IMG/VR virus record: IMGVR_UViG_3300023174_000036
Span: 186,001 to 250,000 of that record
Strand: one strand, 5' to 3'
DNA: 64,000 bases
Below, piece by piece: positions 19,894 through 39,608 of this stretch; the stretch's first letter is position 1; every line of letters begins with the position of its first letter. A program made the translations under genes and the position numbers. Below the pieces are notes generated by a model. The model worked only from the letters and a program-made list of their open reading frames with translations, did no database searches and was not told where the DNA came from.

Positions 19894-19919
19894 TCCTTGA
19901 TTGAATATTTATCAAAGGA
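19894..19919 (-). promoter_or_regulatory. Hairpin sequestering the erpA SD with a TAAATA late promoter in the loop
   Basis: Minus strand TCCTTTGAT-AAATATTCA-ATCAAGGA; 8 bp with one bulge; TAAATA at 19906-19911. Confidence 0.5.
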
Positions 19920-19946
19920 TTTTATAACCTTAATGTAAATACAGTT

Positions 19947-20234
19947 ATGTATATTGGAACTGAATTTAGAATAAACCAGCACATACGCACCAGTAAGAAG
20001 GGTAAGACACATTCTTATAGCCGTAAAGTAACAGTGGTTGTGTTCAAGTGCGATTCGTGTCACGGAGTATTCAACCGAGAAAAAGGATCCATGGATCCCA
20101 AACGATTAAACAACAATTTTTATCATGTGTGCGGGGATTGTGACCCTAAGAAATTTGCACAGATGAAAGGGGTAGAAGCACGTAAAGTGTGGGACATGCC
20201 TGTAAGCAGTCTTAAGACACTCGACCAATTCTAG
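19947..20234 (+). CDS. Small Zn-ribbon-like protein
   Basis: CDSC...CGDC pairs; TAAATA 5 nt upstream of the ATG. Confidence 0.65.
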   Translation: MYIGTEFRINQHIRTSKKGKTHSYSRKVTVVVFKCDSCHGVFNREKGSMDPKRLNNNFYHVCGDCDPKKFAQMKGVEARKVWDMPVSSLKTLDQF

Positions 20235-20772
20235 AACTAATCAAGTTCCAGTTGATAATTTTCCACTGGTTATTAAGATAACCCTTCTTGTCAGCTTGAT
20301 AATCAAGAGCCCACGCATGTTCCCACCAGTCGATCAATAGTATAATATCCATCTTAATTTCGTGATTCTTAATGGTTTTAATACTGCCATCTCTAGCCAA
20401 GTAAGCCCAGCCACTGCCCTGTATTTTCATTGCTGTTTTAGAAAATTCGTCCTTGAATCTATCAAAACTTTTGAAATGTTTGTTGATAAAGTTTTCAGCA
20501 ATGTGCTCAGGTTTGTTAGAGTTGGTAGGAGATTGGAATTGTCTAAAATATATGTCGTGTAAAAAAGCACCAGCTTCGTTGAAATCCGGGTCGCCTTCGC
20601 CCTTGTTGTATCGATCCACATAGCCTTTATAAAGCTGGCCATAATGATAATCTATAGTTTTTTTGCTCAAACTTCGACCCAGCCCACCAGCGGCGTAGGG
20701 CAATGGTGCTTGTTCTAAGGTAGTGGGAGTTTTACCTTCATTTAGGGTCACATATTTGATAAAATTATACAT
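20212..20772 (-). CDS. sod: Fe/Mn superoxide dismutase
   Basis: LPY...YH...Y, FLH, GSGW and DWWEHA motifs; all four metal ligands are present. Confidence 0.9.
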   Translation of the reverse strand: MYNFIKYVTLNEGKTPTTLEQAPLPYAAGGLGRSLSKKTIDYHYGQLYKGYVDRYNKGEGDPDFNEAGAFLHDIYFRQFQSPTNSNKPEHIAENFINKHFKSFDRFKDEFSKTAMKIQGSGWAYLARDGSIKTIKNHEIKMDIILLIDWWEHAWALDYQADKKGYLNNQWKIINWNLISSRIGRVS

Positions 20773-20798
20773 GATTGTATTTATTGTTAAATAACTCA

Positions 20799-20899
20799 GT
20801 CAAGTGATCAATAGGGTATCCAAGGATCCGCAAGTTAAGAATTTTCCCTATTTCTTCTTGGCACAGCTAATGTAGCTCAACGGCGAATTGGCGCTTGAC
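20799..20899 (+). ncRNA. Candidate structured leader/ncRNA
   Basis: Terminal stem GTCAAGTG/CGCTTGAC, inner AATAGGG/CCCTATT, AGCT/AGCT hairpin; begins 5 nt after TAAATA (20788-20793). Confidence 0.4.
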
Positions 20900-20916
20900 A
20901 CCTTAAAGGAAAAGAT

Positions 20917-21147
20917 ATGTTACATCACATTAAAAAATTATTTGGTATTAAACCAAAGGCAGAAGTTCAACCAGAAGCTCCTTATAAAGTTGAAGTTGCA
21001 ACTGTAGCAGAACCAACACCAGTTGCGGTTCAAGCTTCTGAAGCTATGGTTGAATCAGTTGCTCCAGCTAAGAAAAAACCTGCGGCTAAAAAAGCACCAG
21101 CGGCTAAAAAGCCACGTGCTCCAAAAGCACCTAAAGTAGCAAAATAA
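20917..21147 (+). CDS. Lys/Ala/Pro-rich histone H1-like small protein
   Basis: PAKKKPAAKKAPAAKKPRAPK tail; AAGGA SD. Confidence 0.7.
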   Translation: MLHHIKKLFGIKPKAEVQPEAPYKVEVATVAEPTPVAVQASEAMVESVAPAKKKPAAKKAPAAKKPRAPKAPKVAK

Positions 21148-21173
21148 TATAAGGGCATTACGCCCTTATATTA
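21145..21173. terminator. Bidirectional hairpin terminator between convergent genes
   Basis: Perfect 12-bp inverted repeat TAATATAAGGGC-ATTAC-GCCCTTATATTA. Confidence 0.75.
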
Positions 21174-21377
21174 AAACTTGCTTAATTGCTGAGAGTAATT
21201 GGCCATATCCTCTTGAATTTTAGCCCGACGTTGATCATTCAATTTGGGATTTTCTTCCAGCTCTTCTCTAAGGGTTTCCAACCTGTGTATCAGTTGTTCT
21301 CGAGATAGTTTTGGGTTTGATGAACGAGCATTTTGACGTTGTGAGTTGTGTTGACTTTTTTTAGGATTGTAACCCAT
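21171..21377 (-). CDS. Hypothetical helical protein
   Basis: 68-aa ORF filling the gap downstream of uvsE. Confidence 0.55.
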   Translation of the reverse strand: MGYNPKKSQHNSQRQNARSSNPKLSREQLIHRLETLREELEENPKLNDQRRAKIQEDMANYSQQLSKF

Positions 21378-21395
21378 TTGTTTGTTTCATTTTTC

Positions 21396-22418
21396 CTATA
21401 CTAATTTGAGTTCTACGGCTCTGTTGTAAACTTGTTCACTGCTCAAATTTTTGCCTTTGCTTTCGCACATGATATCAAAGTTTTCCCAGAAACTGAGTGC
21501 CCAGTCTGTTACGGGCTGGTTCCAGTACCAGTCACTGTGTGCTCGCATTTTTTGTTTCTTGTAGCCTGCGGCTATCAGATCAGAATGATTGGGTAATACA
21601 TCGATAGGATGATCAACCAGCACATCTTCTCTTGATACACTGTAATGGCACACCGGCCTCACTCCACGCCATGAATCGATAATACGTTTGACTCTGTCGT
21701 CTGTGGGCTGAATGTATTCACCAGTGCGTATCCAATGGTGGTGCAGATCCAGCACAAGAGCACAGCTATCCACCAATTCAATACTGCTGTCCACACCCCA
21801 GCAATTTTCATCATTCTCAATGGTGATGCAGTTACGAGCTTCGGGACTCAACTTCTTTATTGTTTCTTTGATACCTTCAGGACCACGTTTGCCTGAGATA
21901 TGCACATTTATCTTCATATCCTGGAATGTTTTACCAAAGCCCATCCAGCGAGCCATATCCGCATGATATTCAAATTCTTCAATTGAACGTTCCACAATGC
22001 CTGGATTTTCCGAAGCAAGTACACAGAACTGTCCGGGATGGAAACTGATACGCACATCATGCTTACGAGCGGCTTCACCTACTGGAGCAAAGATGCGTTC
22101 ACAGTGGCGTTGTTGATCTGGATGTTGCCACCACACAATCCAATCTTTTTCAGTATAACCACTCAGCATTTCGGATCCAATACGCATCATTCTGCGTTCG
22201 GCAGGTAGAGTAGCAACCTTCTCAATCATTTTGATTGCGGCTGATGTGTTGTGATTCATCAGGTCATATTGACGCTGTTCAGCTTCTAACGGATGCTCAC
22301 GCAACCATCGCATGGTGGTACTGCGACCATTCATCACTCTGTTGGCGGCATTGACCTTCATGCCTCTCACTTCGCTAGCATCGTCTAACCATTTGCAAGC
22401 ATAGCCTATACGTTTCAT
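21396..22418 (-). CDS. uvsE: UV damage endonuclease UvsE/UVDE
   Basis: IGYAC, R.SFHPGQF.VL.S, IENDE and DLHHHW motifs; start moved to MKRIGY. Confidence 0.92.
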   Translation of the reverse strand: MKRIGYACKWLDDASEVRGMKVNAANRVMNGRSTTMRWLREHPLEAEQRQYDLMNHNTSAAIKMIEKVATLPAERRMMRIGSEMLSGYTEKDWIVWWQHPDQQRHCERIFAPVGEAARKHDVRISFHPGQFCVLASENPGIVERSIEEFEYHADMARWMGFGKTFQDMKINVHISGKRGPEGIKETIKKLSPEARNCITIENDENCWGVDSSIELVDSCALVLDLHHHWIRTGEYIQPTDDRVKRIIDSWRGVRPVCHYSVSREDVLVDHPIDVLPNHSDLIAAGYKKQKMRAHSDWYWNQPVTDWALSFWENFDIMCESKGKNLSSEQVYNRAVELKLV

Positions 22419-22426
22419 GTGTGCCT

Positions 22427-22636
22427 TTACCAGTGTCGTATGACACCTAAGATTATAAAAATGTTTGTAAGTACATATGATAACACAATCAAAGTACGAA
22501 TGCAAGCAATACGGTCCGATTCCTCGTCCGTACTGCCTGATTTTTCACCTAATGCTTTGGCCCAGAGTCGCCAAATATCTTTAGCCTTGGTAGATAGCCG
22601 AATTGGCCCCATGTTCTGCACACTCCACTTTGACAC
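22427..22636 (-). CDS. Small membrane protein (WRLWAKALG family seen in T4-like phages); start uncertain
   Basis: WRLWAKALGEK...IRT...TM...IRHW. Confidence 0.55.
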   Translation of the reverse strand: MSKWSVQNMGPIRLSTKAKDIWRLWAKALGEKSGSTDEESDRIACIRTLIVLSYVLTNIFIILGVIRHW

Positions 22637-23030
22637 AATAACAACGATTATTAGTTTTTTCTCTAATCAATTTATCAGCAAAATTGAAAGCATGTTCTGC
22701 AAACTTTTCTGCACCCACACCATCAAAGATTCGTATCTCTGCTAGATCCAATGCTTCCAGTTCTTGGAATTTGGCCAAGTGTGGATCATTTTTATCCAAA
22801 GCCAACTTGTGATCAAAGTGATCTTCCAGCCATGCTTTCAGCGATTTGAGTCCGCCAAAGTCCACTGCCCAGTTTTTGTTGTCTAATTCATCACAGCCAA
22901 AAGTGAATGTGAACGCTAGACTGTAACCATGTAGTAAATGACAATGCGAATGATCTGCATTTGGTTGTCTAAACACAGCACTGAGTCCAATGTTGTGTCC
23001 GTAATGTTTTGTTGAGTAATACTTTGCCAT
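22581..23030 (-). CDS. queD: 6-carboxy-5,6,7,8-tetrahydropterin synthase (QueD/PTPS family)
   Basis: C.LLHGY, VDFG.LK, FDHK motifs and C-terminal E...NSA; start at MAKYY with AGGA SD. Confidence 0.88.
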   Translation of the reverse strand: MAKYYSTKHYGHNIGLSAVFRQPNADHSHCHLLHGYSLAFTFTFGCDELDNKNWAVDFGGLKSLKAWLEDHFDHKLALDKNDPHLAKFQELEALDLAEIRIFDGVGAEKFAEHAFNFADKLIREKTNNRCYCVKVECAEHGANSAIYQG

Positions 23031-23052
23031 TGTTGTTTTTCCTATTAACAAT

Positions 23053-23096
23053 GACACGCAGAGTTTATATTGCGGGATGAGCGTCTAAGTCCGCAT
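23053..23096 (-). promoter_or_regulatory. Candidate preQ1-I-like riboswitch/pseudoknot in the queD 5' UTR
   Basis: UGCGG-ACUUAGACGCUCAUC-CCGCA-AUAUAAACUCUGCGUGUC: 5-bp P1, loop ending CAUC, A-rich tail, possible P2 UAGA/UCUG or ACGC/GCGU. Confidence 0.5.
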
Positions 23097-23102
23097 AATA
23101 TA

Positions 23103-23130
23103 ATTATACGCTTTTACAGCGTATGGTCAA
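23103..23130 (-). promoter_or_regulatory. sigma70-like promoter for queD-uvsE
   Basis: TTGACC-N16-TATAAT. Confidence 0.7.
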
Positions 23131-23132
23131 GT

Positions 23133-24344
23133 TTATTGGCGACCAATTGCACCAAATGGTAACCATTGTCCAGGCGTACCAGACGAAATGCACACCCAAC
23201 CAACGTAACCGCTTTCAACTGGATTCTCATTCCATTGGATATCACCTTTGTTGAACTGTCCTTCGGTTGGAACTTGACTACCTTTGATAAATTTCTTATT
23301 ATTCAAAGTAACTGCACCATCAACGGTTAAATCTGAAGTGGTGGCAATTGGACCAAATATCTTAACTGGTCTGCGACCAAAGTTTGGATTACCAACAATG
23401 ATTTCGTCATTACTGCCATAAAATATATCTTCTTCATTGATGGAGATTTTATGGTGTTTGTTACTGTTAGTGCCTTGTGCAGTTACAGATAAACTTTCAA
23501 TACCGTTGTTAATAAACACAGATTTAAAACTTGCGTTGCTTAGTCTAGCATTTAAATTGCCTTGTATTTCAGCATCACCAGTAACGGTCAACCACTGTAG
23601 TGGTCCCACAGTGATTAGGTTACTGTTAACCACACTTGAACCCAAATCAGTCGCACTCAATACAGATCTACCATTTATATGATATGCTTGCTGGTCATCC
23701 AGATCCAAGGATGTACTGGCCCATAATCTATCAGGACCATCACGCATGATCAACTGACGAGTAATACGATCTGCAGACCAAATTAAACCCAAACCGTATA
23801 TGCTGCCGTCTCTATTGGCTTTGAATTCTAACGGACTGTTACGTTCAACACGAGTATCTGAAACAAAATTGTCAACGTGCAAAGACCCATGCACTCGCAA
23901 TACACCAGATTTTCCAGCTTCATTTCCAATAACTACTTCACCGTTGCTTTTTACAAGTATGCGTGGAATATTGTCAGAAATGATAGCAACATCGCTAGTG
24001 GAATAAGTTCCAAAATGTGCAATACCAGGCTCAGGGCTTCCAATAGCAATTTCAACGTCGTTGTCTAAAATACTGATGCTGGCGTTGGCATCTAAAGTGC
24101 CAAGACCCAATCGGCCGTTTGAGCTGTTAAAATGTGCAAATTCTGCCAGTGTGGTAGTGCCTGATACTTCTAAACTTTTAAGAGTACCAATTTCTCTTAG
24201 ATTACTTTTAGTAACAGTAATACCAAGCTCAGTGCTTGATAACACAGGAGTATTATCAATTTTGTAAGCGTGATCAGCAGACAGATCTAGGTTACTATCT
24301 GCCCATAATCTATCGTTTCGTACGGTTAATTGTTGTGTTGTCAT
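23133..24344 (-). CDS. Virion structural / tail-spike-like protein
   Basis: Fibre-like beta repeats (SNLREIGTLKSLEV / SNLITVGPLQWLTV); C-terminal KGDI.WN..P...GWVC...GTPGQW..FG. Confidence 0.65.
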   Translation of the reverse strand: MTTQQLTVRNDRLWADSNLDLSADHAYKIDNTPVLSSTELGITVTKSNLREIGTLKSLEVSGTTTLAEFAHFNSSNGRLGLGTLDANASISILDNDVEIAIGSPEPGIAHFGTYSTSDVAIISDNIPRILVKSNGEVVIGNEAGKSGVLRVHGSLHVDNFVSDTRVERNSPLEFKANRDGSIYGLGLIWSADRITRQLIMRDGPDRLWASTSLDLDDQQAYHINGRSVLSATDLGSSVVNSNLITVGPLQWLTVTGDAEIQGNLNARLSNASFKSVFINNGIESLSVTAQGTNSNKHHKISINEEDIFYGSNDEIIVGNPNFGRRPVKIFGPIATTSDLTVDGAVTLNNKKFIKGSQVPTEGQFNKGDIQWNENPVESGYVGWVCISSGTPGQWLPFGAIGRQ

Positions 24345-24345
24345 A

Positions 24346-24383
24346 ATGGAGTCTCTTTATCTAATATTTATCAGAGACTCCAT
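24346..24383 (-). promoter_or_regulatory. Hairpin over the translation-initiation region with a TAAATA late promoter in the loop
   Basis: Perfect 11-bp IR ATGGAGTCTCT...AGAGACTCCAT ending 1 nt before the ATG; loop GATAAATATTAGATAA. Confidence 0.75.
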
Positions 24384-24398
24384 CAATGAACTACCAAA

Positions 24399-25595
24399 TT
24401 ATGCTACCTTAAGCAAGATGGTATCTTCGTTAATACGGCCGTTTAATTTGGTGTCCGTAGCGTTAATGTCATCTAAGAATTTACGCAACTGCACCTTGCC
24501 CGCGGCCTTGAACTCTTTGAGTTTTTCTTCGGGCTTACGTATAGTCTTTTGAATACTGGTAAACTCGTTAAAGTTGGTAATTGTAGTACCTTTGACGTTT
24601 AATGTGTTAAACTCTGCGGCCACATACTTGCCCAGTTTACGAGTTTTGGTATTAAAAATCCACAGTTCGCCAGCACCGATAATGTCAGTGGGATTAATCG
24701 AAACAAGTTTCAAAGGCTCATTTGTCTTCATAAACTTGAGTTTAGCAACTAACTTTTCTTTTGGAACTGCTTTAGTTTTACGTGGAGCACGATTAACTTT
24801 GGCTTCTTGTGCCAGCATATCGCAAGCACTCATAATCTCTTGATAAAAAGCAATCAAGTTCTTAATTTGCTTACGGCTACGGTGGCTATAGCCCTCTTTG
24901 AGCTGTTCATCTGCCTTACCGCTAGCCAACTCTTCAAGCTCAGCTAAATCCCTACTGTAGAGGGTTTTAATGATTCTAGCATGTGCCGCTTTGACTTCCT
25001 TGCCTTTCAGCAAGTTAAGCATTTTAAATGCTTTAGGATCAAAGTTTTCTGGATCTGCGTGGAAACCTTCGATGGCGTCTTCAATTTCTTCAGTCATACG
25101 CAAGGCAGATTCTTTAACACGCTCTTGAATAGTGGGTTGCGCCACCGTGGGCTTTACTTCGACAACTGCTTCTTCGTCTACGTCGTCTTTACCCTGTGCA
25201 ACGATTTGCACAATTTCGTTACGCAACCAAACTGTAGTGTCTCGGCCCTTGTTAAAATCTTCACGAACAGCAGGCATACCTCGAAGCAAGCAACTGGCAA
25301 TGGCACCCATTGTGACATTACAACGATTATCTTTGGTTCGCTTGAAAGCCGCAATGTCTTCTTTGGTACAACCAATAGTAGTCATCCATTTGATAACAGC
25401 AGGCTTCAAATCCTTGCCCGAAAATTCCAAACGATAGTAGCTCATAGCACTGTGAAAATGGCGCATGAATTGATCAGCGTCCATAGTTTCACAACCTTCC
25501 CAAGTTGGGCTGTGATCCTTAACCGCTTTGGTGCGATGTGCAATCACTTGCTTTTTGGTTACACGAGTTTTTGTTGCTGGTGCTTTAGTAGCCAT
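24399..25595 (-). CDS. Basic hypothetical early protein
   Basis: 398 aa, Lys-rich; GGAG SD at MATKAP; own sigma70 promoter. Confidence 0.75.
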   Translation of the reverse strand: MATKAPATKTRVTKKQVIAHRTKAVKDHSPTWEGCETMDADQFMRHFHSAMSYYRLEFSGKDLKPAVIKWMTTIGCTKEDIAAFKRTKDNRCNVTMGAIASCLLRGMPAVREDFNKGRDTTVWLRNEIVQIVAQGKDDVDEEAVVEVKPTVAQPTIQERVKESALRMTEEIEDAIEGFHADPENFDPKAFKMLNLLKGKEVKAAHARIIKTLYSRDLAELEELASGKADEQLKEGYSHRSRKQIKNLIAFYQEIMSACDMLAQEAKVNRAPRKTKAVPKEKLVAKLKFMKTNEPLKLVSINPTDIIGAGELWIFNTKTRKLGKYVAAEFNTLNVKGTTITNFNEFTSIQKTIRKPEEKLKEFKAAGKVQLRKFLDDINATDTKLNGRINEDTILLKVA

Positions 25596-25625
25596 TTCTG
25601 CTCCTGTTTGTTTAACAATATACAT

Positions 25626-25654
25626 ATTATACTGCCAAACTGCGGTGTTGTCAA
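25626..25654 (-). promoter_or_regulatory. Consensus sigma70 promoter
   Basis: TTGACA-N17-TATAAT. Confidence 0.85.
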
Positions 25655-26460
25655 CCAGACAATTTTCTTATTGTACTGTCATTTTTGGGCAAAATTCCCA
25701 AATTAACATAATCTAAATATTGATTTAAATTGATTTTTTTATTTAATATTTTTGAATGAAAATATTCATGTTTAAAATTATTTACATCCAACTCTTGAAT
25801 AGACTGTGTTATCAAATCAACTAGTATCTTTATATTAGGTTCGGATAAATGGTTTGAACGTGGGTCAAATCCAATCATATTACCACGATACTCGTCGTTG
25901 GAATAAAAATCATAAATTTCATTTCTAGAAATATGCCCTAGATACACATCGGGCATTAAAAAATTTTTTGGCATCGCATACGGTAATTTTTCACGGAACG
26001 GTAAATTCTTCAATAAAATAAATTTTACGCTTGGTTTAGCGTATGCATAGTTAATTAGAGAATGTATATAGCTTTGTTGATTTATGTCTATCAGTCTATA
26101 GTCTTGGTTTACCAAGTACCATTCAATAAATGATTTATTATCACAATACCAAGTGTCTCTATAATTGTCTGGCACATCATGCACATAATTACTAGCCTTG
26201 TTAGGCACATTGTCGGTTACATATCTAAGATTTACTCTGCCAGCAGTAGTCATTACAAAACAAATTATATCATCATCAGCAATAACATTATTACTAATGT
26301 CTCTGCAAATATTAAGCATAGAAAATTCCGTACTACTGCCACCTACTGCTTGGTTGATTAATGGGATACCAAGGCTTTTGGATAGCAGTTTAGGCCAACT
26401 ATCTTGACTATAGTCATACTCGGCCGCATAACTACATCCGTAAATTCTTAGGGTACTCAT
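25651..26460 (-). CDS. SGNH/GDSL-like hydrolase or acyltransferase
   Basis: YGCSY...W..LL...N.AVGGSS and C-terminal NH. Confidence 0.55.
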   Translation of the reverse strand: MSTLRIYGCSYAAEYDYSQDSWPKLLSKSLGIPLINQAVGGSSTEFSMLNICRDISNNVIADDDIICFVMTTAGRVNLRYVTDNVPNKASNYVHDVPDNYRDTWYCDNKSFIEWYLVNQDYRLIDINQQSYIHSLINYAYAKPSVKFILLKNLPFREKLPYAMPKNFLMPDVYLGHISRNEIYDFYSNDEYRGNMIGFDPRSNHLSEPNIKILVDLITQSIQELDVNNFKHEYFHSKILNKKINLNQYLDYVNLGILPKNDSTIRKLSG

Positions 26461-27128
26461 GGTAAACTCAATTCCACTAAACCAGTTGGGTTAATTAAAA
26501 TCAAATCAGCTAATCTATTTCCAAATTTTTGATTTTGGTCGTCTGTAAAATGGTTACGATTTGATTGATCTTCTGGGTAACCTGCCCATGCCCATAATCT
26601 TTCTTTGATAGTCATGCCATTTTGAAACACATAGTTTACAGTACTGTCAAAACACAGCAGATGTACCACATAAGGAATATTATAAGATGCGATGAGCGCA
26701 TCCAGTTCTAGATGCCAAGCCTGTTGTGCCCACCTACAATACTCTCCACACCATAGTTGTTCATAATAAGATACTGCCGCCTTAACAATTTTCTGTTGTG
26801 TAGATCTATCCATATCCAGATGTTCACCGTGCAACGCTATTTTTCCATGGCCAAGTATACCGCTATTGATACCACAATCCATGTCGTTGGGTATTCTATT
26901 TGGTTCAGTATGACACATTATCAAAACTTTTGGTACGCAAATTTCCAGCTCTGACAACAAACGTTTTCTAGTGCTCCACCACGAGCCTCCGCCAAATCCG
27001 TATCCTCGTGGGATGTTATTATAACCAGTCAATCGCTGACTTATAATCATAGGCCAGTCGTTGTGAGTGTCTCTATCTCCGCAAAAACTATCGCCCACTA
27101 TCAGTATGTCTTTGTGTTCAAACATCAT
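26457..27128 (-). CDS. SGNH/GDSL-like hydrolase or acyltransferase
   Basis: IVGDSF...W...GGS.W and C-terminal NHF...N. Confidence 0.55.
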   Translation of the reverse strand: MMFEHKDILIVGDSFCGDRDTHNDWPMIISQRLTGYNNIPRGYGFGGGSWWSTRKRLLSELEICVPKVLIMCHTEPNRIPNDMDCGINSGILGHGKIALHGEHLDMDRSTQQKIVKAAVSYYEQLWCGEYCRWAQQAWHLELDALIASYNIPYVVHLLCFDSTVNYVFQNGMTIKERLWAWAGYPEDQSNRNHFTDDQNQKFGNRLADLILINPTGLVELSLP

Positions 27129-28701: not shown

Positions 28702-28704
28702 ACA

Positions 28705-29247
28705 TTAACCTTTATAAAATCCTGAAATTTGTAAAGTATATTTGTCTTGCATACCTGCATTTGAACTGAGATGTAACACATTGCTGTCCCACATAAAGCC
28801 CGATCCTTTCTGCCAGTCAACACTAGTTTTGTAAGAGTCTTCAGTTTGATACTGAATAAACTGTCCCAGTTTCCAATCTTCTAAATAAATGTTAGCCCTG
28901 ACTTTTAAATCTGTTCGATTGGGATATTGTTTTGAAATTTGAAAGAATGTATCTCTATGCAAAGGCACTACACAACCCGGAGGTTGCAATATGGTGCTCA
29001 CAGTAATGACTTCCATGTTTAGTTGTTGGCCTAATTCCACATAGTCAACTTGATCAGCAGTCCACCAAAGTTGATGTATAATGGTATTTTCAAAACAATA
29101 GCTCTTGGGAAATCCGCCATATGTTTCATGCACATCTGTTAATTCATGTACTTGATGTTTGATGCAACTGCCTTCGTGAACAGAATAATCTGCACTTAGA
29201 AACATTTCAAAATCATAATCTAGTTGTATTTCTTTTAACATATTCAA
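28705..29247 (-). CDS. 2OG-Fe(II) oxygenase/cupin
   Basis: PG..VPLHRD...H.S.N.G..KYTLQ. Confidence 0.7.
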   Translation of the reverse strand: MNMLKEIQLDYDFEMFLSADYSVHEGSCIKHQVHELTDVHETYGGFPKSYCFENTIIHQLWWTADQVDYVELGQQLNMEVITVSTILQPPGCVVPLHRDTFFQISKQYPNRTDLKVRANIYLEDWKLGQFIQYQTEDSYKTSVDWQKGSGFMWDSNVLHLSSNAGMQDKYTLQISGFYKG

Positions 29248-30299: not shown

Positions 30300-30301
30300 T
30301 G

Positions 30302-31567: not shown

Positions 31568-31568
31568 T

Positions 31569-33617
31569 TTACACTTCGCTAGATTTTGACAGTGGAATGT
31601 CGGCACCACAAGTACATGATCTCTGTGTGCAAACTATTTCTTTTTTAAAATTAACCCAATTGATTTTTTCCCACTCGGCCATGGTTCCCCAAGACCTACC
31701 ACCTACTTGACAGTTTGCCTTGCGTATGTTGCCAGTCTGATGTATGAACATACTTTCTTTACCAATAGAACAGTTCCAGTTGTAAAATCTAGTTTGTCCT
31801 TTATTGATCAACGATTGATAACTATCCGCTCCTTTTACAACAGTGCCGTCTTTGTATGTTATCATTGGGCTCATATTTAGATTTTTAACAAAATAATTAG
31901 GAGAAGCTGTTCTTGGTTCTATAGTTTTAAAGTTTTCAAAAAATTTCAGCTGTTCTGGACTGTAGTTTATTACACAAAGTTTGTTGGCCTGCTGACCATA
32001 TTGTTCCTCAATCATAACAATGTCAATTCTCACATTGGTCTGTGTTTTTACTTTTTCAATGAATTCTATACAGTTGTCCCAATATAACGGATCCATCATA
32101 ACCCTCACCGTTGTTTTAGTAAACCTGCTGGAAACTTTTAATTTTTCAATAAATGCATCACTGGTTTGATTTTTGAATTCAAATGCAGGATGAAAGCTAC
32201 ATGATGCTTGTAACAAATATTTGAAATTTTCTTCAATAAATCGTTCAGTGCGAGATAAATTGGTAGTCAGCACAGTGTGATGACCGCGATCATATATCTC
32301 TTTAATCAACTGCGTGAAAAACGGACTCATGGTTGGTTCGCCGCCTGATATTGAAAAAATAATTTTTCTATCGTTTTCTGATAGCATGTCTATGGAGTGA
32401 GATATAAAAGGCTCCACTTGTTCCCAGCTGAGAGGATAATTTTTACCGTCATGCAATTCGCTTGGACAATATCTGCACGAGTAGTTACACACATCATTAA
32501 GGATCCAGGTCACTAATGAAAATTCGTTATTTTCAATTTTGACAATCTCCGTACCTTGTATGGGCGGCAACTGTTTCCAATAGGGTTGTCTTTTTTCCTT
32601 GTCCTCATATTCCTCGTAGGCTTGACTGGACGATATGATAGAATAATCAAATATTTCAGTAAATCTTGACAAATCAACTTTTAAAGAGTATTGACGATCT
32701 GACCATAACTCTTCTTTTTGTCTGCCATCCAAGGTTCCAATGGCATAGTATCCTTCTCTATTTTTAAAAAATTCGCCGTAACTAAAACCAAATTGCTCTG
32801 GATTTAATTTCTTCCAGCGATGGTGGTATAGTTTAAATCTTTCGGGTGTATTATCCGACGGAAACATGTGTATCAATATTTCGTTTGACCATGTGGTTTG
32901 TGGGGATATTAAATTTTTCTTTAAACTTTCTAAATCTTCATCGTGTATGATATGTTTGAGACTTTTGCCCAGAGTATTGTAACCCAGGCAAAAATCCCCA
33001 AAGTCTAGAAATGGCTTTAGGCAAAATAAATCTTCATCTTCCAATTCATAATTTGTTCGAGGATTATAACTTGCCACACAAACAAATTCTGACGCTTCTG
33101 TCCAGTCTTCTTTTAATGCAACTTCTGCTGAATGTATTAGGTCGTTGAGCAGTACAAATGCATTGTGCATGTCTTCGTTGAATGTTATGCCTGGCCAACG
33201 CTTTGCATAAGCATGAGTTTCATCGTACAGTTGATAAGCAGTATCCCACCATTTTTCTTTTAATTTTTCCTGATTTCGAACACCGTATATTGCATAGTTG
33301 TCGTGTAATTCGTTCAGTATATCTTGTGTTAATATAGTTATGGGATATCTTAATTTTAAATCATAAAAAGAATTTATTCTCTTGATAATGGTATTGAATT
33401 TTTTTATAAAATCTTCATCAATTTTAAAATTTTTATGATGTACTTTTCTTTCTCGAAAGCTGTAATCACTTTTTTTAAGTTTTTTTAATTCAGCTACCCA
33501 TTTGTGTGCAAGTGGTACATCAAACAAATTAAAATAAAGATCGTAGTTTTCCAAAGTCTTGGGATCAATCAAAGTGACTCGGACTGCGTCATTTATAAAT
33601 CGATTTGCATTACTCAT
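31569..33617 (-). CDS. Fusion of an uncharacterised domain and a radical SAM enzyme (subtype B)
   Basis: C-terminal half W.L..VCNYSCRYC, SGGEPT, C...C.C..D; N-terminal half resembles ORF 52291-53181. Confidence 0.85.
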   Translation of the reverse strand: MSNANRFINDAVRVTLIDPKTLENYDLYFNLFDVPLAHKWVAELKKLKKSDYSFRERKVHHKNFKIDEDFIKKFNTIIKRINSFYDLKLRYPITILTQDILNELHDNYAIYGVRNQEKLKEKWWDTAYQLYDETHAYAKRWPGITFNEDMHNAFVLLNDLIHSAEVALKEDWTEASEFVCVASYNPRTNYELEDEDLFCLKPFLDFGDFCLGYNTLGKSLKHIIHDEDLESLKKNLISPQTTWSNEILIHMFPSDNTPERFKLYHHRWKKLNPEQFGFSYGEFFKNREGYYAIGTLDGRQKEELWSDRQYSLKVDLSRFTEIFDYSIISSSQAYEEYEDKEKRQPYWKQLPPIQGTEIVKIENNEFSLVTWILNDVCNYSCRYCPSELHDGKNYPLSWEQVEPFISHSIDMLSENDRKIIFSISGGEPTMSPFFTQLIKEIYDRGHHTVLTTNLSRTERFIEENFKYLLQASCSFHPAFEFKNQTSDAFIEKLKVSSRFTKTTVRVMMDPLYWDNCIEFIEKVKTQTNVRIDIVMIEEQYGQQANKLCVINYSPEQLKFFENFKTIEPRTASPNYFVKNLNMSPMITYKDGTVVKGADSYQSLINKGQTRFYNWNCSIGKESMFIHQTGNIRKANCQVGGRSWGTMAEWEKINWVNFKKEIVCTQRSCTCGADIPLSKSSEV

Positions 33618-34851
33618 TTGATAAATTTTCCACAGCTTGTTTTACTAGTCTCATTTCAGGAATTACATCTAGCAATTTTTCATCTCTAACAGCATCAACT
33701 TGTTCAGTTACCTTTAAGAATTTTTTGGCCGCTGACAAATCAAAGGGCTGTTTTAGCTCATGAATAGTATGTGTAAACAAATGATCAATAGTGGTATCGT
33801 ATTTTTTGTTGTGTTCCACAATGAACTTTTCTAATTTTTTAATGGTTGCTTGTCTAAAATCATCTGGCAATATATGCATGTGATAATGAGTTGGATCAAA
33901 CAAAAGATTAATAAAGAAATTTTGAAATTTATGTTTCTTACGCACAACACCAATTTCCACTAGTCTGTTGATAATTTCGGGCAATCGATTAACATTCCAT
34001 GCACCAATAGTTAATCCTGGTCTAACAACAATGTTGTCCAGTTTGACCATCTCTTTCAAGTTGTCTTCTACCTTGCTCCACACAGTGCCTGACCTTATGA
34101 TCTCAGCACGTTCGTCGATTTCGTCAATACTGGGCCATACTTCAACTTTCCAATCGTCCCACAATCTCCAATAGTCCAGCACATTCTTTTTGCCGTACAT
34201 CAACGTACTTGCATTGGTATTGTAACTGACTTTGACATCGAATCTCTTATGCTCCACTAGCATATCTAAGATTTGCCAATGCTCGGGCATCAACAGTGGC
34301 TCACCGCCCGCAAAGTAAATTTTTTGTACATGTTCTACTTGATCTTTTAAGAAATCAAAATTGGTAGATGTGCCAACTTGGTCAATACTCCAAACTTTTT
34401 CTTGATCAGAATAACCAAGTTTTTTAGCATCAGGAACCCATGCGCTACTATATCGTGGGCCGCAACTGCGACATTTCATATTGCACAAATTGCTAAAACG
34501 AAAGTCCCAGTATTTTAACTCCATAGTTTTACATGTGCCATCAGGTTCTGTAATTTCTGGAATAATCTTAATTACATCAGGAAAATCTTTATTGTGATAA
34601 AATCTTCCACTTTCTCCGGTGACTTTTTCTCGGTCAAAACATTTGTTGCAAATTTTAGGCTCTACTCCGTTGATCATATCTTTGCGGAGATCTTTCATAT
34701 TTTGACTATTCCAAACCTGATCAATAGTTTGCGTATTTAGGTCGCCCGCAAAATAATTATGCACCGAAGTTAAACAACACGGCACAACTTGTCCACTAGG
34801 TTCGAATGCCAAATGCATCCACGGCACTGCACATAGGGTATCTTTACTCAT
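33610..34851 (-). CDS. Radical SAM enzyme with N-terminal twitch-like Cys domain (subtype A)
   Basis: CAVPWMH...CC...CNKC, then CNMKCRSC and FAGGEP; TAAATA at 34883-34888 supports the MSKDTL start. Confidence 0.9.
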   Translation of the reverse strand: MSKDTLCAVPWMHLAFEPSGQVVPCCLTSVHNYFAGDLNTQTIDQVWNSQNMKDLRKDMINGVEPKICNKCFDREKVTGESGRFYHNKDFPDVIKIIPEITEPDGTCKTMELKYWDFRFSNLCNMKCRSCGPRYSSAWVPDAKKLGYSDQEKVWSIDQVGTSTNFDFLKDQVEHVQKIYFAGGEPLLMPEHWQILDMLVEHKRFDVKVSYNTNASTLMYGKKNVLDYWRLWDDWKVEVWPSIDEIDERAEIIRSGTVWSKVEDNLKEMVKLDNIVVRPGLTIGAWNVNRLPEIINRLVEIGVVRKKHKFQNFFINLLFDPTHYHMHILPDDFRQATIKKLEKFIVEHNKKYDTTIDHLFTHTIHELKQPFDLSAAKKFLKVTEQVDAVRDEKLLDVIPEMRLVKQAVENLSNE

Positions 34852-34922
34852 TTTATTTTTTCTCTTATGTATAAATCGTTTGTATTTACGATAATACTTT
34901 TCTAAAACCGGCCGTATTGAAA

Positions 34923-35762
34923 TCATGTCCAAAGACTGTCTCGGGCCTTAATAAGACGAATCATCATTTCGGTATCTTCTTTTTCGTAAGCCGCTTCAAT
35001 CTTTTGCAGTAGCTTGTGTGCTTTATCGCTGGCCTTTTTAAGTGTAGGATCTTTTTCCTGTCCCCAATTTAACTTGCCACCATTGGCGATACGACTTGCT
35101 TCGCAGACCGCAGTCCACCCACTGGCTTCATATGGATCGGGTCGGTTGCGATAAGTCACTGTCCACCAAGTGTACAGCTCTTTGATTTCTTTAGCACGAA
35201 TTGCTTGTCCGGTAGGTTTGCCGTAGTCGGGATGATCTGGTTCACACCAGTCAGTGTTAGTCAAAGTCATTGCCCAATCAAGATGATCGAGTCCTGCTTG
35301 TGGGCAACGCCAAGTTCTCCAACGCCACCAACCACTGGCCCAGAAAGGAGGATTGTATTTGGCACGATCTTCTTTGCTTCCCCAAGCGATGTGACTCCAT
35401 GCAGACTCTACTTCAACAAAATCCACAAGTTCGTTAAAAAGACATGGGAGAAACCGATTGCCAACATCGCACCAATTACCAGGGGTAATATCACGAGGGT
35501 GAGCAGTGAGTGAGTGGGTTCGAGTAACGAATCGATTATTGATATAATACTTTGCATCATAAATTTTCCTTACAGGCCATGTGACAAAATCTTGAACGTG
35601 TCCAAGTGCTTCTTCGGCTAGCCAATAACGGAAGTTGTGTTTCATTTGAGCCCGAGTGGTCCACTCGTCCCATTCTTCTGCTGTTCCTGCACTCAATTTC
35701 TTAGTGCCGCGAAGCCAGTCTGCAAAAGGTGTGCATGACCAATAGTGTGTATGATGTGCCAT
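34923..35762 (-). CDS. Trp-rich hypothetical protein
   Basis: 279-aa ORF with overlapping start/stop junctions. Confidence 0.7.
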   Translation of the reverse strand: MAHHTHYWSCTPFADWLRGTKKLSAGTAEEWDEWTTRAQMKHNFRYWLAEEALGHVQDFVTWPVRKIYDAKYYINNRFVTRTHSLTAHPRDITPGNWCDVGNRFLPCLFNELVDFVEVESAWSHIAWGSKEDRAKYNPPFWASGWWRWRTWRCPQAGLDHLDWAMTLTNTDWCEPDHPDYGKPTGQAIRAKEIKELYTWWTVTYRNRPDPYEASGWTAVCEASRIANGGKLNWGQEKDPTLKKASDKAHKLLQKIEAAYEKEDTEMMIRLIKARDSLWT

Positions 35763-36199
35763 TAAATCTTCTCGTAAGTTTGTGCAAATATATCTTTTTT
35801 GACTACCCCGTAGTCGTTCTCACCATGTCGAACAATAACATCTTCGCCTGGATTATAGTGTAACTTCTCACCCCATGATGTGTCAACTGATCCGGAACGA
35901 TCCGCCAACTTGGCCCATTTGACGATCTTTTTTGGTGTACAAACACCATCTCCCAAATCGTCTTTAAGATCGTCAAACCGTTCTGGACTGATAGGATATT
36001 GTTCTCCTTTGGGCCCGGTCATAATATAAAAACCTTTAGGATACTTGACTGGTCCTTCCAGTGTATCAATAGTGCCAGGTTTATCTGCAATCTCATAACG
36101 TTCTTTGGCAGGACGTTTGTAGGCTTTGAATCCACCGTCCTTGAACCAGTCGTCAGTGATATGCATACCTTCTACAATATTGATGTATTCACGAATCAT
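35762..36199 (-). CDS. PGDYG-like two-repeat protein
   Basis: Two repeats: TLEG...G.YI..GPKGEQYP and TSWG...GEDV.V......DIFAQTYE. Confidence 0.55.
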   Translation of the reverse strand: MIREYINIVEGMHITDDWFKDGGFKAYKRPAKERYEIADKPGTIDTLEGPVKYPKGFYIMTGPKGEQYPISPERFDDLKDDLGDGVCTPKKIVKWAKLADRSGSVDTSWGEKLHYNPGEDVIVRHGENDYGVVKKDIFAQTYEKI

Positions 36200-36891: not shown

Positions 36892-36902
36892 TTTTTTCTC
36901 CT

Positions 36903-37268: not shown

Positions 37269-37468
37269 TATGCCATCCTATCTACGTTTTGTCCTGCACG
37301 GTTCATCCGTCGGTTCATTTCAATTCTTGCTTCTTCGTTGGCTTTGAGATTTGCTTTTACACGTCTCTCTTCCAAACGCAGTTCTTCGTGCCGCTTGTCC
37401 AATTTTTTAATTTCTGTCTGACGATACATTTCTGCATTTTGTGCAGATACTCTACTGATTTCTGTCAT
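37268..37468 (-). CDS. Small coiled-coil protein
   Basis: 66 aa, coupled to the ligase stop; ends GQNVDRMA. Confidence 0.6.
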   Translation of the reverse strand: MTEISRVSAQNAEMYRQTEIKKLDKRHEELRLEERRVKANLKANEEARIEMNRRMNRAGQNVDRMA

Positions 37469-38790
37469 AGTTTTTCTCCTACTTCAAAGCCCCTGAACCG
37501 TAAGAACCTTGGAAAGCGCAAACTGTATGTGCCGTCTTGGTTCCTTGTAACGGCATCTGCTCGCACTTCCACGATCTGGCCAAGTAAGGAATCACGTGAA
37601 CTCCAATAACTATCGCGATCACTATCGCTAAAACCACTACCAACGTTGACTCGAATAGTTTTTCCGTCATCGACTCCTTGGCATACAATTGCTCCAAGGC
37701 GTCCAATATTTCTTCCTGTTCCTTCTTCGACATCTATCACCTCCAAAGACACTTCAATAAAAGGCTTCAATTTGAGCCATGCCACACTGCGTTTACATTC
37801 ATAAGGCGCCGCAGGATCTTTAATCATAATGCCTTCGTACCCGCCAGCCACTGCCTTTTGATTAATTTCTTTAAAACGTACTTGACCATCTGCTGTGTCC
37901 AAATCAACAAGTTCATGACCAACAACTGTGACATTGGGCAACATATCTTTATATGTTTTGTGCCAGTGGTAAATCATGTCACTACGAGTGGACTGATCTT
38001 TATCCCAGAATCCTTTTTCAAAATCTGCTAACGGTATTACGTCAAACAAGTTAAGCACAGCATCACCTGCTTCAACATTGTCCTTGCGGTGTACTTGTTT
38101 CATCAAGTCTTGAAAACTGGACGACATGATCTCACCGTCTAGCACAACATCTATATTTTGGTCAGTACCATGTGTTTTGACCACTGCACTAAGTTGTTCT
38201 ACAATGTGTGGAAAATTAGCAAGTTCTTTACCATTACGACTGAACATGTCCACCCGACCATCACTGCGTACAATAGTAAGTACTCTAACTCCGTCGAGTT
38301 TAACTTCGATAAGTTTTTTGCCTGATACCTTCGACTCATGATTAGCACTATCATGAGCAAGCTGACAACCGAATACAGGAATAGCATAGTCAGCATACTT
38401 CTTTTCCACTACTTTGTTAATTGTTTTTTCGCTTACACCACAGCGCAGGTCTTTGATCAAAATACGACGATACCAGCCATTCCATTCTTTTTGAGTAGCT
38501 GACTTCATCATTGCTTGAATCATGTCACGTGCTGTATTGCCTGTGACGTTGCGAGTAACGAAACCAGTAAGAGCGAGAGTAAAACTACTCCAAGGTAAGC
38601 CAGGCCCATCTTCATCTTTTTTCTCCGGAATTTGTTTGAGTCCAAAAGTAATCATAGGATCAAGAGCAAGGCGACACCCTTCAAAAAATTCATCACATTT
38701 TTCTTGTGCAATGACTTCGATAATGCCTTCTTTATCTAAACGTGAATTATGGGTTTCTAAATTCCAAATATGACTGGCACAAACGCTCAT
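37465..38790 (-). CDS. lig: ATP-dependent DNA ligase
   Basis: KLDGVR, DGE, EGIMIK, WLKLK motifs and OB-fold SLRFPRF. Confidence 0.95.
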   Translation of the reverse strand: MSVCASHIWNLETHNSRLDKEGIIEVIAQEKCDEFFEGCRLALDPMITFGLKQIPEKKDEDGPGLPWSSFTLALTGFVTRNVTGNTARDMIQAMMKSATQKEWNGWYRRILIKDLRCGVSEKTINKVVEKKYADYAIPVFGCQLAHDSANHESKVSGKKLIEVKLDGVRVLTIVRSDGRVDMFSRNGKELANFPHIVEQLSAVVKTHGTDQNIDVVLDGEIMSSSFQDLMKQVHRKDNVEAGDAVLNLFDVIPLADFEKGFWDKDQSTRSDMIYHWHKTYKDMLPNVTVVGHELVDLDTADGQVRFKEINQKAVAGGYEGIMIKDPAAPYECKRSVAWLKLKPFIEVSLEVIDVEEGTGRNIGRLGAIVCQGVDDGKTIRVNVGSGFSDSDRDSYWSSRDSLLGQIVEVRADAVTRNQDGTYSLRFPRFLRFRGFEVGEKL

Positions 38791-38822
38791 TTTGACTCCG
38801 ATGATTAACTGTATAAGTTTAT

Positions 38823-38851
38823 ATTATACAGAGTAATTATCAGTATGTCAA
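38823..38851 (-). promoter_or_regulatory. Consensus sigma70 promoter for the ligase operon
   Basis: TTGACA-N17-TATAAT. Confidence 0.85.
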
Positions 38852-39565
38852 GTGATTTGTGGTCTTAAATGGTTTGCCAAGATGTGCATTTTCCAAATTA
38901 CGCACAACCAAATTTCTCATTCTGCGTATAATTGGATGATTGTGGTTCCAATCAAATGCTTTTAAATAGTCATTCCAAGTGGAATTTTTATGTCGTCGAC
39001 ATTGATTTGAATCTAAGTAACGAGCAATAGCAGTTGGGTCGTAGCCAAAACGGTCAACCAATTCACAAGCACAATTGAACGCATGAGCACCCATTTCGTC
39101 TCGATCACCATAGTACTCTTGCTGTTTACGCTCTTTGGCATATTCTGCGGTGCTTTGATATCCGGGAATATTTTTAAAATTACGGCTACGGAATTGGCGT
39201 TGATGCACGATTTCATGCAGTACCACATCAGCGAATCTTATAGCCATTCGTTTGAAACGATGATTAGTTAACCTCAACTTTTTATCCTCGGGATTGTAGT
39301 TGAAATTAACTTCTATGGCAGGCACCTTTTTTCGATCCAAATCACTGTAATAAACACCACCCATGAAAACAAAACCTTTGGTAGTGGGTGCATATATGCA
39401 TTTTTTAATCTTAACGGGTACATGCCGTTTGACATGTCTAGAAATGCGTTTTTGGAGTTGACTAGGACTTAGCTCTTTGCCCACTATTTCACTGTTAAGC
39501 GAATAGAACATAGAGTACAGATTACTGCGTGTTAGTTCCGACCAATTGAACGGTAGCTGAGTCAT
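38840..39565 (-). CDS. HExxH zinc-metalloprotease-like protein
   Basis: LHEIVHQRQ...YY...DEM.A.A; paralog of 47308-47976. Confidence 0.6.
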   Translation of the reverse strand: MTQLPFNWSELTRSNLYSMFYSLNSEIVGKELSPSQLQKRISRHVKRHVPVKIKKCIYAPTTKGFVFMGGVYYSDLDRKKVPAIEVNFNYNPEDKKLRLTNHRFKRMAIRFADVVLHEIVHQRQFRSRNFKNIPGYQSTAEYAKERKQQEYYGDRDEMGAHAFNCACELVDRFGYDPTAIARYLDSNQCRRHKNSTWNDYLKAFDWNHNHPIIRRMRNLVVRNLENAHLGKPFKTTNHLTY

Positions 39566-39566
39566 T

Positions 39567-39608
39567 GCACACTCCTAGTAAGTATATTTATAGTATACTA
39601 GGGTGTAC
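39567..39608 (-). promoter_or_regulatory. SD-sequestering hairpin with TATAAATA late promoter in the loop
   Basis: Minus strand GTACACCCTAGTA-TACTATAAATATACT-TACTAGGAGTGTGC-A-ATG; AGGAG lies in the 3' arm. Confidence 0.7.

What the first reader, a model, noticed from the sequence alone, without database searches (positions are those of the whole stretch)
19894..39608. Recurrent translational timer: late promoter inside the loop of an RBS-occluding hairpin (3 copies)
Seen at 24346-24383 (perfect 11-bp stem ending next to the ATG of a virion gene), 39567-39608 (about 13 bp, AGGAG in the 3' arm) and 19894-19919 (8 bp, AAGGA in the 3' arm). Each loop contains TAAATA. The first two lie downstream of sigma70-driven units (promoters at 25626 and 41199). 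Established: T4 uses this arrangement for genes e, soc, 49 and I-TevI, where early read-through RNA folds and is silent while late RNA starts in the loop and lacks the 5' arm. Inference: this phage uses the device systematically, and it marks the HExxH protein and ErpA as strictly late functions.
Basis: partly seen in the sequence, partly recalled or inferred. Interest (0 to 1): 0.6.

Follow-up and report, generated by a model that had tools for sequence, protein, structure and literature searches.

The report
Late promoters inside start-site-hiding RNA hairpins
This uncultured 356-kb freshwater T4-like phage hides the ribosome-binding sites of several late genes in RNA hairpins that also hold the late promoter, the same trick phage T4 uses for its lysozyme gene, so it is a well-supported new example of a known device.

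Summary
All three hairpins are real, lie on the minus strand at the stated coordinates, and hold a T4-type late promoter (NATAAATA).

- **Promoter classes:** the phage has a gp55-like late sigma factor. ATAAATA is depleted genome-wide, yet 56 of 75 copies sit just upstream of genes.
- **Energy cost:** opening the start site costs 18.3 (site 1), 8.2 (site 2) and 4.1 (site 3) kcal/mol more on read-through RNA than on late RNA. T4 genes e and 49 score 14.9 and 12.5 by the same measure.
- **Single-sequence significance:** only site 1 stands out alone (z -4.85).
- **Conservation:** related IMG/VR contigs keep the device at all three places: 47/48, 39/42 and 19/47 versions, against 2/55 in a hairpin-free control family. 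Arm sequences differ, and the helix always ends at the start codon.
- **RNA level:** 271 G·U pairs against 3 A·C mismatches on the sense strand.
- **Prevalence:** about a third of leader-bearing late promoters carry it, 9/28 against 12/184 other genes.
- **Site 3:** weakest, and its upstream neighbour is divergent.
- **Untested:** start sites and translation.

Verdict: new member of a known kind.

The parts
24346..24383 (-). Site 1 hairpin. The 5' arm is 24383-24373, the loop 24372-24357 and the 3' arm 24356-24346. The 3' arm covers the AGAGA Shine-Dalgarno-like bases and ends 1 nt before the ATG.
   Evidence: 11 perfect pairs, -22.9 kcal/mol, z -4.85, ddG 18.3 kcal/mol. The equivalent device is kept in 47/48 related versions.
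24365..24372 (-). Late promoter GATAAATA in the site 1 loop. The predicted late start is about 24359-24358.
   Evidence: Motif class established. The start position is inferred from T4 spacing and from the 4-5 nt leaderless class.
23133..24344 (-). Late gene of site 1: a 403-aa virion or tail-fibre-like protein.
   Evidence: phrog_6002 virion structural protein (1.1e-17). The C-terminus matches tail-fibre families.
24399..25625 (-). Upstream early gene (phrog_11903, function unknown). Its read-through RNA would carry the 5' arm of site 1.
   Evidence: It is conserved in 80 IMG/VR loci.
25626..25654 (-). Perfect sigma-70 promoter, TTGACA-17-TATAAT, driving the unit upstream of site 1.
   Evidence: All 56 unique relatives have a 0-1 mismatch promoter here, against 3-5 mismatches in control segments.
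39567..39608 (-). Site 2 hairpin. The 5' arm is 39608-39596 and the loop 39595-39581. The 3' arm is 39580-39567 with A 39573 bulged, and it holds AGGAG (39576-39572).
   Evidence: -19.0 kcal/mol, z -1.86, ddG 8.2. 39/42 related versions have ddG >= 7. 89% of cells pair in the majority register.
39585..39592 (-). Late promoter TATAAATA in the site 2 loop. The predicted late start is about 39579.
38840..39565 (-). Late gene of site 2: a 241-aa protein with HEIVH (an HExxH motif), function unknown.
   Evidence: motif. No Pfam or PHROG family. Only viral hypothetical clusters. No clear fold match.
39624..40214 (-). ClpP protease gene, the last gene of the early unit upstream of site 2.
   Evidence: PF00574, 2.9e-77.
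41199..41227 (-). Perfect sigma-70 promoter of the unit that reads towards site 2.
38823..38851 (-). Perfect sigma-70 promoter that restarts early transcription (DNA ligase and onward) right after the HExxH gene.
   Evidence: Ligase identified.
19883..19929 (-). Site 3 structure. The inner helix is 19919-19894 (8 pairs plus a bulge, AAGGA at 19898-19894). The outer helix is 19929-19923 with 19889-19883 and covers the ATG at 19888.
   Evidence: -11 kcal/mol, z -0.85, ddG 4.1. In the family alignment 91.7% of cells pair and 0/500 shuffles reach that. 19/47 versions have ddG >= 7.
19906..19913 (-). Late promoter GATAAATA of site 3. GAT lies in the 5' arm. The predicted late start is about 19900.
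19565..19888 (-). ErpA/IscA-type iron-sulphur assembly gene, the first gene after the site 3 promoter.
   Evidence: PF01521, 5.7e-20.
9686..19558 (-). 3290-aa tail-fibre gene, 7 nt after ErpA. It has no late promoter of its own and is probably co-transcribed from the site 3 promoter.
   Evidence: tail-fibre PHROGs. (no other ATAAATA between the two genes).
19947..20234 (+). Conserved 95-aa Cys-rich gene divergent from ErpA. It is the true upstream neighbour of site 3.
   Evidence: intact at 66-100% identity in 77 related loci.

Best explanation
These are T4-type late-promoter-in-hairpin devices. They keep late genes untranslated on RNA that starts upstream.

How it works:
- Host sigma-70 polymerase starts at consensus early promoters and reads through into a late gene.
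- On that long RNA a 5' arm pairs with the Shine-Dalgarno region and/or the AUG, so ribosomes cannot start. The 5' arm lies just before the NATAAATA box or includes it.
- Later, polymerase carrying the phage's gp55-like sigma starts about 6 nt after NATAAATA. That is inside the loop or the 3' arm.
- The late RNA therefore lacks the 5' arm, is unstructured and is translated.

Shown here:
- The promoter classes.
- The helices and their energy cost.
- Their conservation.
- Their selection as sense-strand RNA structures.
- A helix end that tracks the start codon.

Inferred:
- The exact late start sites.
- Actual read-through.
- The effect on translation.

Strength by site: strong for sites 1 and 2, weak for site 3.
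For: Promoter classes:
- ATAAATA occurs 75 times against about 155 expected. 56 copies lie within 100 nt upstream of gene starts, with a spacing peak at 17-30 nt.
- A gp55 homologue is present (phrog_12791, 1.9e-73).
- There are 25 perfect sigma-70 promoters against about 0.5 expected.

Energy cost of opening the start site, long minus late RNA:
- 18.3, 8.2 and 4.1 kcal/mol for sites 1-3.
- 14.9 and 12.5 kcal/mol for the proven T4 cases e and 49.
- The late RNAs are nearly unstructured.

Genome-wide: 9/28 late genes have ddG >= 7, against 12/184 other genes with similar spacers (Fisher p 3e-4).

Related contigs:
- 47/48, 39/42 and 19/47 unique versions have ddG >= 7.
- A control late-promoter family has 2/55.
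- Site 1 relatives use at least six unrelated arm designs. The commonest puts the promoter in the 5' arm and the AUG in the 3' arm, as in T4 gene 49.
- The last paired base lies between -3 and +7 of the AUG in all 46 versions, while the distance to the upstream stop varies from 0 to 37 nt.

RNA-level selection:
- 271 sense-strand G.U pairs against 3 A.C mismatches.
- The sense fold is the more stable in 113 of 128 versions.

Read-through:
- Versions that also have a canonical terminator keep a weaker hairpin (median 9.4 against 16.4).
- The upstream gene has a 0-1 mismatch sigma-70 promoter in all 56 relatives.
- No U-tract follows the stems.
Against: - No start-site, read-through or translation data exist for this phage. 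The one metatranscriptome holds assembled contigs only and has no coverage of site 1.
- Formal covariation within each family is modest: 1-3 pairs with double changes. The arms are constrained by the promoter, the Shine-Dalgarno bases and the AUG, and the sequences are close relatives.
- Site 2 alone has z -1.86 and site 3 alone z -0.85.
- Site 3 has a divergent upstream gene and terminator-like sites before it.
- With crude gene calls, high ddG is no commoner behind co-directional genes (7/24) than behind opposite-strand ones (3/11).
- The terminator comparison rests on one or two lineages.
Confidence: 0.72

Rival explanations
1. The hairpins serve the upstream early RNA as weak terminators, 3'-end stabilisers or processing sites. 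They overlap the promoter and start site only because the spacers are short (about 55 nt).
For: - Each hairpin sits 0-37 nt after the upstream stop codon.
- One other strong case (genome position 257990) looks terminator-like, with GGGGCTTTCT after the stem.
Against: - No U-tract follows the stems at sites 1-3. None was picked up by the terminator scan.
- Relatives with a separate canonical terminator still keep the promoter-spanning hairpin.
- The 3' end of the helix tracks the AUG, not the upstream stop.
- Site 3 has no co-directional upstream gene.
Confidence: 0.13
2. The inverted repeats act as DNA. They would be operators for a dimeric regulator of late promoters, or cruciform-prone sites that tune promoter opening.
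For: - The repeats are centred on or include the late promoter.
- I-TevI is known to repress its own late promoter by binding an overlapping operator.
- The divergent promoter pair at 57008-57038 is a DNA palindrome by construction.
Against: - Arm sequences differ completely between designs while pairing is kept.
- Non-Watson-Crick positions are 271 G.U against 3 A.C on the sense strand, and the antisense folds are weaker. A DNA site would show no such strand bias.
Confidence: 0.05
3. The window's own site 3 copy is a chance or incidental stem in an AT-rich divergent promoter region and has little regulatory effect.
For: - z is -0.85 and 35 of 200 shuffles fold as well.
- ddG of 4.1 lies below the 90th percentile (5.37) of ordinary genes.
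- Part of the region is constrained by the divergent gene's promoter.
Against: - In the family 91.7% of cells pair and 0/500 shuffles reach that.
- 147 G.U pairs against 0 A.C mismatches.
- 19/47 versions have ddG >= 7, against 2/55 in the control family.
- A U-A to C-G double change accompanies an ATG to GTG start codon change.
Confidence: 0.25

Closest known systems
T4 gene e (lysozyme) leader (McPheeters et al. 1986, cited from own knowledge; reviewed in PMC3014915)
   Same: - A late promoter TATAAATA sits within the helix region.
- The 3' arm holds the Shine-Dalgarno bases and reaches the AUG.
- Early read-through RNA folds. Late RNA lacks the 5' arm.
- The computed ddG is similar: 14.9 against 18.3 and 8.2 kcal/mol.
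   Different: - The host phage is a distant 356-kb uncultured relative.
- The regulated genes are a tail-fibre-like protein, an HExxH protein and ErpA, not a lysis enzyme.
- Nothing has been tested at the bench.
T4 gene 49 (endonuclease VII) leader
   Same: The promoter itself lies in the 5' arm and the 3' arm runs into the AUG. This is the same design as the commonest site 1 relatives, CATGGATAAATACTC...GAGTATTTTATCCATG.
   Different: - The window's own site 1 has the promoter in the loop.
- Gene 49 has nested starts. None was seen here.
Homing-endonuclease hairpins: I-TevI, I-TevII, I-TevIII, segB and mobE of phage Aeh1 (PMC2988022)
   Same: A late gene is embedded in an early or middle unit. 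Its ribosome-binding site is sequestered on long RNA and freed on RNA from an adjacent late promoter.
   Different: - No homing endonuclease or intron is involved here.
- No operator-type autorepression is evident.

Membership tests
T4-type late-promoter-in-hairpin translational occlusion (e, soc, 49, I-TevI class) | A gp55-dependent late promoter (TATAAATA-like -10 box, no -35 box) lies immediately upstream of the gene. | tested here: met
   NATAAATA lies 17-20 nt before each ATG. The motif is enriched 11-fold upstream of genes. A gp55 homologue is present.
T4-type late-promoter-in-hairpin translational occlusion (e, soc, 49, I-TevI class) | An RNA helix sequesters the Shine-Dalgarno bases and/or the AUG on the long transcript. 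| tested here: met
   Predicted folds. ddG is 18.3, 8.2 and 4.1, against 14.9 and 12.5 for T4 e and 49. The helix is conserved in relatives and ends at the AUG. This is in silico only, and site 3 is weak.
T4-type late-promoter-in-hairpin translational occlusion (e, soc, 49, I-TevI class) | The late transcript starts downstream of the 5' arm and so cannot form the helix. | not testable with these tools
   The start is inferred from T4 spacing (start about 6 nt after the box). Indirect support: nine genes have ATG 4-5 nt after ATAAATA, which fits leaderless RNAs starting at that distance. The RNA run holds contigs only.
T4-type late-promoter-in-hairpin translational occlusion (e, soc, 49, I-TevI class) | Early or middle transcription from upstream reads into the gene. 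| tested here: inconclusive
   - Sites 1 and 2: perfect sigma-70 promoters lie 1.25 and 1.6 kb upstream on the same strand, with no convincing terminator between.
- Site 3: the upstream neighbour is divergent and terminator-like sites lie before it. One RNA-library contig bridges 19700-20169.
- Actual read-through has not been measured.
T4-type late-promoter-in-hairpin translational occlusion (e, soc, 49, I-TevI class) | Translation is repressed on the long RNA and efficient on the late RNA. | not testable with these tools
   This needs toeprinting, reporters or ribosome profiling.
Intrinsic (Rho-independent) terminator | A G+C-rich stem is followed directly by a U-tract. | tested here: not met
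   The bases after the stems are TATGACAACA, AATGACTCAG and CAAATATGAT. None of the three was reported by the terminator scan.
Any curated RNA family (Rfam 15) | A match at the family's gathering score. | tested here: not met
   No match in window 18000-43000.

The most novel reading that the evidence does not exclude
A large clade of uncultured freshwater T4-like jumbo phages may use a modular 'late island' grammar.
- Single late genes sit inside sigma-70 early units. They include swappable tail-fibre cassettes and accessory enzymes.
- Each island brings its own promoter-in-hairpin insulator and is followed by a fresh consensus early promoter.
- A second class of late genes is expressed from leaderless RNAs, with ATG 4-5 nt after ATAAATA.
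- The many unrelated hairpin designs at one conserved junction would then mark cassette exchange, with the insulator travelling with the cassette.
Probability: 0.4. Interest if true: 0.55.

Novelty: new member of a known kind. Interest (0 to 1): 0.4.

Why it matters
- It extends a classic T4 timing device to a distant, uncultured jumbo-phage clade. It also shows the device is under selection there, with strand-specific G.U pairs and many arm designs.
- It gives a sequence-only way to call genes that are late at the level of translation in metagenomic phage genomes.
- It flags a tail-fibre-like protein and an unknown HExxH protein as products that are probably kept off early.
- It does not reveal a new mechanism.

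Tried and rejected
- **Near-identical phage search:** megablast of 5 kb against GenBank phages found nothing. Protein-level hits only place the phage near PA5oct, phiM12 and Cr30-type T4 relatives.
- **T4 gp45 in this genome:** no match. This is uninformative.
- **RNA evidence:**
  - The only RNA run with this phage (X1/X2, a freshwater metatranscriptome) is held as contigs. It gives no starts, strand or expression level.
  - It has no coverage at 23700-24700. One contig bridges site 3.
  - I laid 5,991 letters.
- **Formal covariation:**
  - Counts are modest.
  - The window-type pairing register at site 2 shows no covariation beyond shuffles.
- **Upstream gene orientation:** linking hairpin strength to the orientation of the upstream gene or to the nearest promoter class was inconclusive with crude gene calls.
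- **Looser promoter variants:** N[CGT]TAAATA added no further convincing devices.
- **HExxH protein function:**
  - No Pfam or PHROG family.
  - Only viral hypothetical clusters in the Atlas.
  - The AlphaFold model (pLDDT 79.9) has no significant Foldseek match. The best E-value is 0.63, with zincins such as IrrE and SPRTN among the weak rows.
  - No clear VIA match; the top Z is 5.6.
- **Conserved block upstream of site 3:** I first suspected an extra promoter in TTTACATTAAGGTTATAAAA. It is the promoter and 5' end of the divergent 95-aa gene.
- **Not used:** the big protein searches and alternative genetic codes were not needed.
Full report
**What the window is**

The window is bases 186001-250000 of a 356,312-bp IMG/VR virus record with 39.9% G+C. 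The genes in the flagged stretch run on the minus strand. Protein matches place the phage among distant T4 relatives such as PA5oct, phiM12 and Cr30.

**Promoter classes**

I made crude gene calls (464 genes covering 93% of the genome) and looked for words enriched upstream of gene starts.
- ATAAATA is the top 7-mer. It occurs 75 times on both strands, against about 155 expected from base composition.
- 56 of those copies lie within 100 nt upstream of a start, in the right orientation.
- The distance from the motif to the start codon peaks at 17-30 nt (35 sites), with a second peak at 4-5 nt (9 sites).
- The genome encodes a gp55-type late sigma factor (E 3.3e-7 to T4 gp55; phrog_12791 at 1.9e-73).
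- It holds 25 perfect TTGACA-N16-18-TATAAT promoters, against about 0.5 expected. Three are in the flagged stretch on the minus strand: 25654-25626, 38851-38823 and 41227-41199.

So the phage has consensus host-type early promoters and T4-type late promoters.

**The three elements**

| | Site 1 | Site 2 | Site 3 |
|---|---|---|---|
| Stem | 11 perfect pairs | 13 pairs, one bulge | 8 pairs plus a bulge; outer 7-pair helix over the ATG |
| Promoter | GATAAATA in the loop | TATAAATA in the loop | GATAAATA, with GAT in the 5' arm |
| 3' arm | ends 1 nt before the ATG | holds AGGAG | holds AAGGA |
| Long RNA, kcal/mol | -22.9 | -19.0 | -11.0 |
| z-score of long RNA | -4.85 | -1.86 | -0.85 |
| Predicted late RNA, kcal/mol | 0 | -4.1 | -0.5 |

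The late RNAs were modelled from a start about 6 nt after the box. None of the stems is followed by a U-tract. None was called by the terminator scan. Rfam has no match in the region.

**A common yardstick**

I computed the extra free energy needed to unpair positions -14 to +4 around the start codon on read-through RNA compared with late RNA.

| Case | ddG, kcal/mol |
|---|---|
| T4 gene e (proven) | 14.9 |
| T4 gene 49 (proven) | 12.5 |
| Site 1 | 18.3 |
| Site 2 | 8.2 |
| Site 3 | 4.1 |

- Across the genome, 10 of 35 late genes with a leader reach 7 kcal/mol, against 22 of 407 other genes.
- Among genes with at least 25 nt of upstream spacer the figures are 9/28 against 12/184 (Fisher p 3e-4).
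- The medians do not differ (p 0.13). So a subset carries the device, about a third, as in T4. It is not every late promoter.
- Two of the high scorers are the divergent promoter pair at window 57008-57038, which is palindromic by construction.
- Other strong cases precede a 1031-aa tail-fibre gene, a nuclease gene and genes of unknown function.

**Related contigs**

IMG/VR holds 77-80 related loci for each site.

*Site 1 junction*
- 68 of 80 loci have a NATAAATA-type box after the conserved upstream gene.
- The 46-48 unique versions use at least six unrelated arm designs.
- The commonest is CATGGATAAATACTC...GAGTATTTTATCCATG. The promoter lies in the 5' arm and the AUG in the 3' arm, which is the design of T4 gene 49.
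- 47 of 48 versions reach 7 kcal/mol, with a median of 14.7.
- The last paired base falls between -3 and +7 of the AUG in all 46 versions. The distance to the upstream stop codon ranges from 0 to 37 nt.
- All 56 unique relatives have a 0-1 mismatch sigma-70 promoter before the upstream gene.
- Eleven versions also carry a canonical terminator. They keep the hairpin, but it is weaker (median 9.4 against 16.4, p 1e-6). They belong to one or two lineages.

*Sites 2 and 3*
- At site 2, 39 of 42 versions reach 7 kcal/mol (median 11.6).
- At site 3, 19 of 47 do (median 4.5).

*Control*
- A late-promoter family with no hairpin in this genome gives 2 of 55 (median 2.0).

*Pairing and covariation*
- 93.9%, 89.0% and 91.7% of cells pair, against 19-60% when the partners are slid.
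- Double-sided changes are few.

**RNA or DNA?**

In the folds of the three families, the non-Watson-Crick positions are 62, 62 and 147 G.U pairs on the sense strand, against 0, 3 and 0 A.C mismatches. The antisense folds show 24, 35 and 8 A.C mismatches. The sense fold is the more stable in 36/46, 38/41 and 39/41 versions. This bias fits a structure selected in sense-strand RNA. It does not fit a DNA operator or cruciform. The promoter sits inside the structure, so only RNA that starts upstream can form it.

**Gene context**

*Sites 1 and 2*
- Both are single late genes inside early units. Site 1 precedes a tail-fibre-like protein and site 2 a 241-aa protein with HEIVH.
- The stretch between them encodes DNA ligase, three radical-SAM proteins, a Bax1-I protein and nucleotide-sugar enzymes.
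- The HExxH gene is followed at once by a perfect sigma-70 promoter. The site 1 gene is followed by an 11-of-12 match (TTGACC-16-TATAAT, 23130-23103).
- The function of the HExxH protein stays unknown.

*Site 3*
- Its upstream neighbour is a conserved divergent 95-aa Cys-rich gene.
- Terminator-like sites lie between the SOD gene and ErpA.
- ErpA is followed 7 nt later by a 3290-aa tail-fibre gene with no late promoter of its own. The promoter probably serves that gene too.

**What is known**

Reviews describe this device for T4 e, soc, 49 and I-TevI (PMC3014915). It is also described for I-TevII, I-TevIII, segB and Aeh1 mobE (PMC2988022). Conservation of the gene e structure among close T4 relatives is noted in PMC3014915.

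**Limits**

- No start-site or translation data exist.
- The only RNA run holding this phage gives contigs only. It has none over site 1 and one that bridges site 3.
- Gene calls are heuristic.
- The related sequences are not independent of one another.

**Verdict**

- 'Systematic' and 'strictly late' are overstated.
- This is a new member of a known kind.

Noticed in passing
window 20772-20791 (-); genome-wide list: Nine predicted genes have their ATG 4-5 nt after ATAAATA and no Shine-Dalgarno bases. In eight of them it is the first possible start of the frame. The SOD gene (AATAAATACAATCATG) is one. The divergent 95-aa gene at 19947 has TGTAAATA-N5-ATG. This fits leaderless late mRNAs that start at the A of the AUG.
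   Followed up: partly
window 57008-57038: There is a back-to-back divergent late promoter pair, CCTATAAATA-N11-TATTTATAGG. It forms a 10-bp palindrome that scores as an occluding hairpin for both genes. Similar pairs lie at genome positions 87995/88019 and 13342/13393.
   Followed up: partly
genome 445-3980 and 352784-355972 (outside the window): Perfect or near-perfect sigma-70 promoters cluster every 300-900 bp at both ends of the record. This looks like an immediate-early region of short genes.
   Followed up: no
window 26457-36199 (-): The early unit between sites 2 and 1 encodes three radical-SAM/SPASM proteins, a cytidylyltransferase-cupin fusion, a PRA-PH-like protein, a PGDYG protein and a Bax1-I membrane protein. 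It may be a modification or small-molecule pathway.
   Followed up: no
window 19947-20234 (+): A conserved 95-aa protein with CxxC...CxxC lies between the SOD gene and ErpA. It belongs to no known family and is intact in 77 related contigs.
   Followed up: partly
window 9686-19558 (-) and genome 58213-68091 (-): There are two giant genes of 3290 and 3292 aa. The first matches tail-fibre families.
   Followed up: partly
L006, L028, L047-L050, L054, L055, L059, L062, L068 (site 1 relatives): In relatives whose downstream gene begins MSQ..., a strong canonical terminator has been added between the early gene and the late promoter. The occluding hairpin is weaker there.
   Followed up: yes
window 19700-25690: A 2015 freshwater metatranscriptome (run X1) holds 57% of the sampled words of this stretch. 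Phages of this type were therefore present in that RNA library, though DNA carry-over cannot be excluded.
   Followed up: partly
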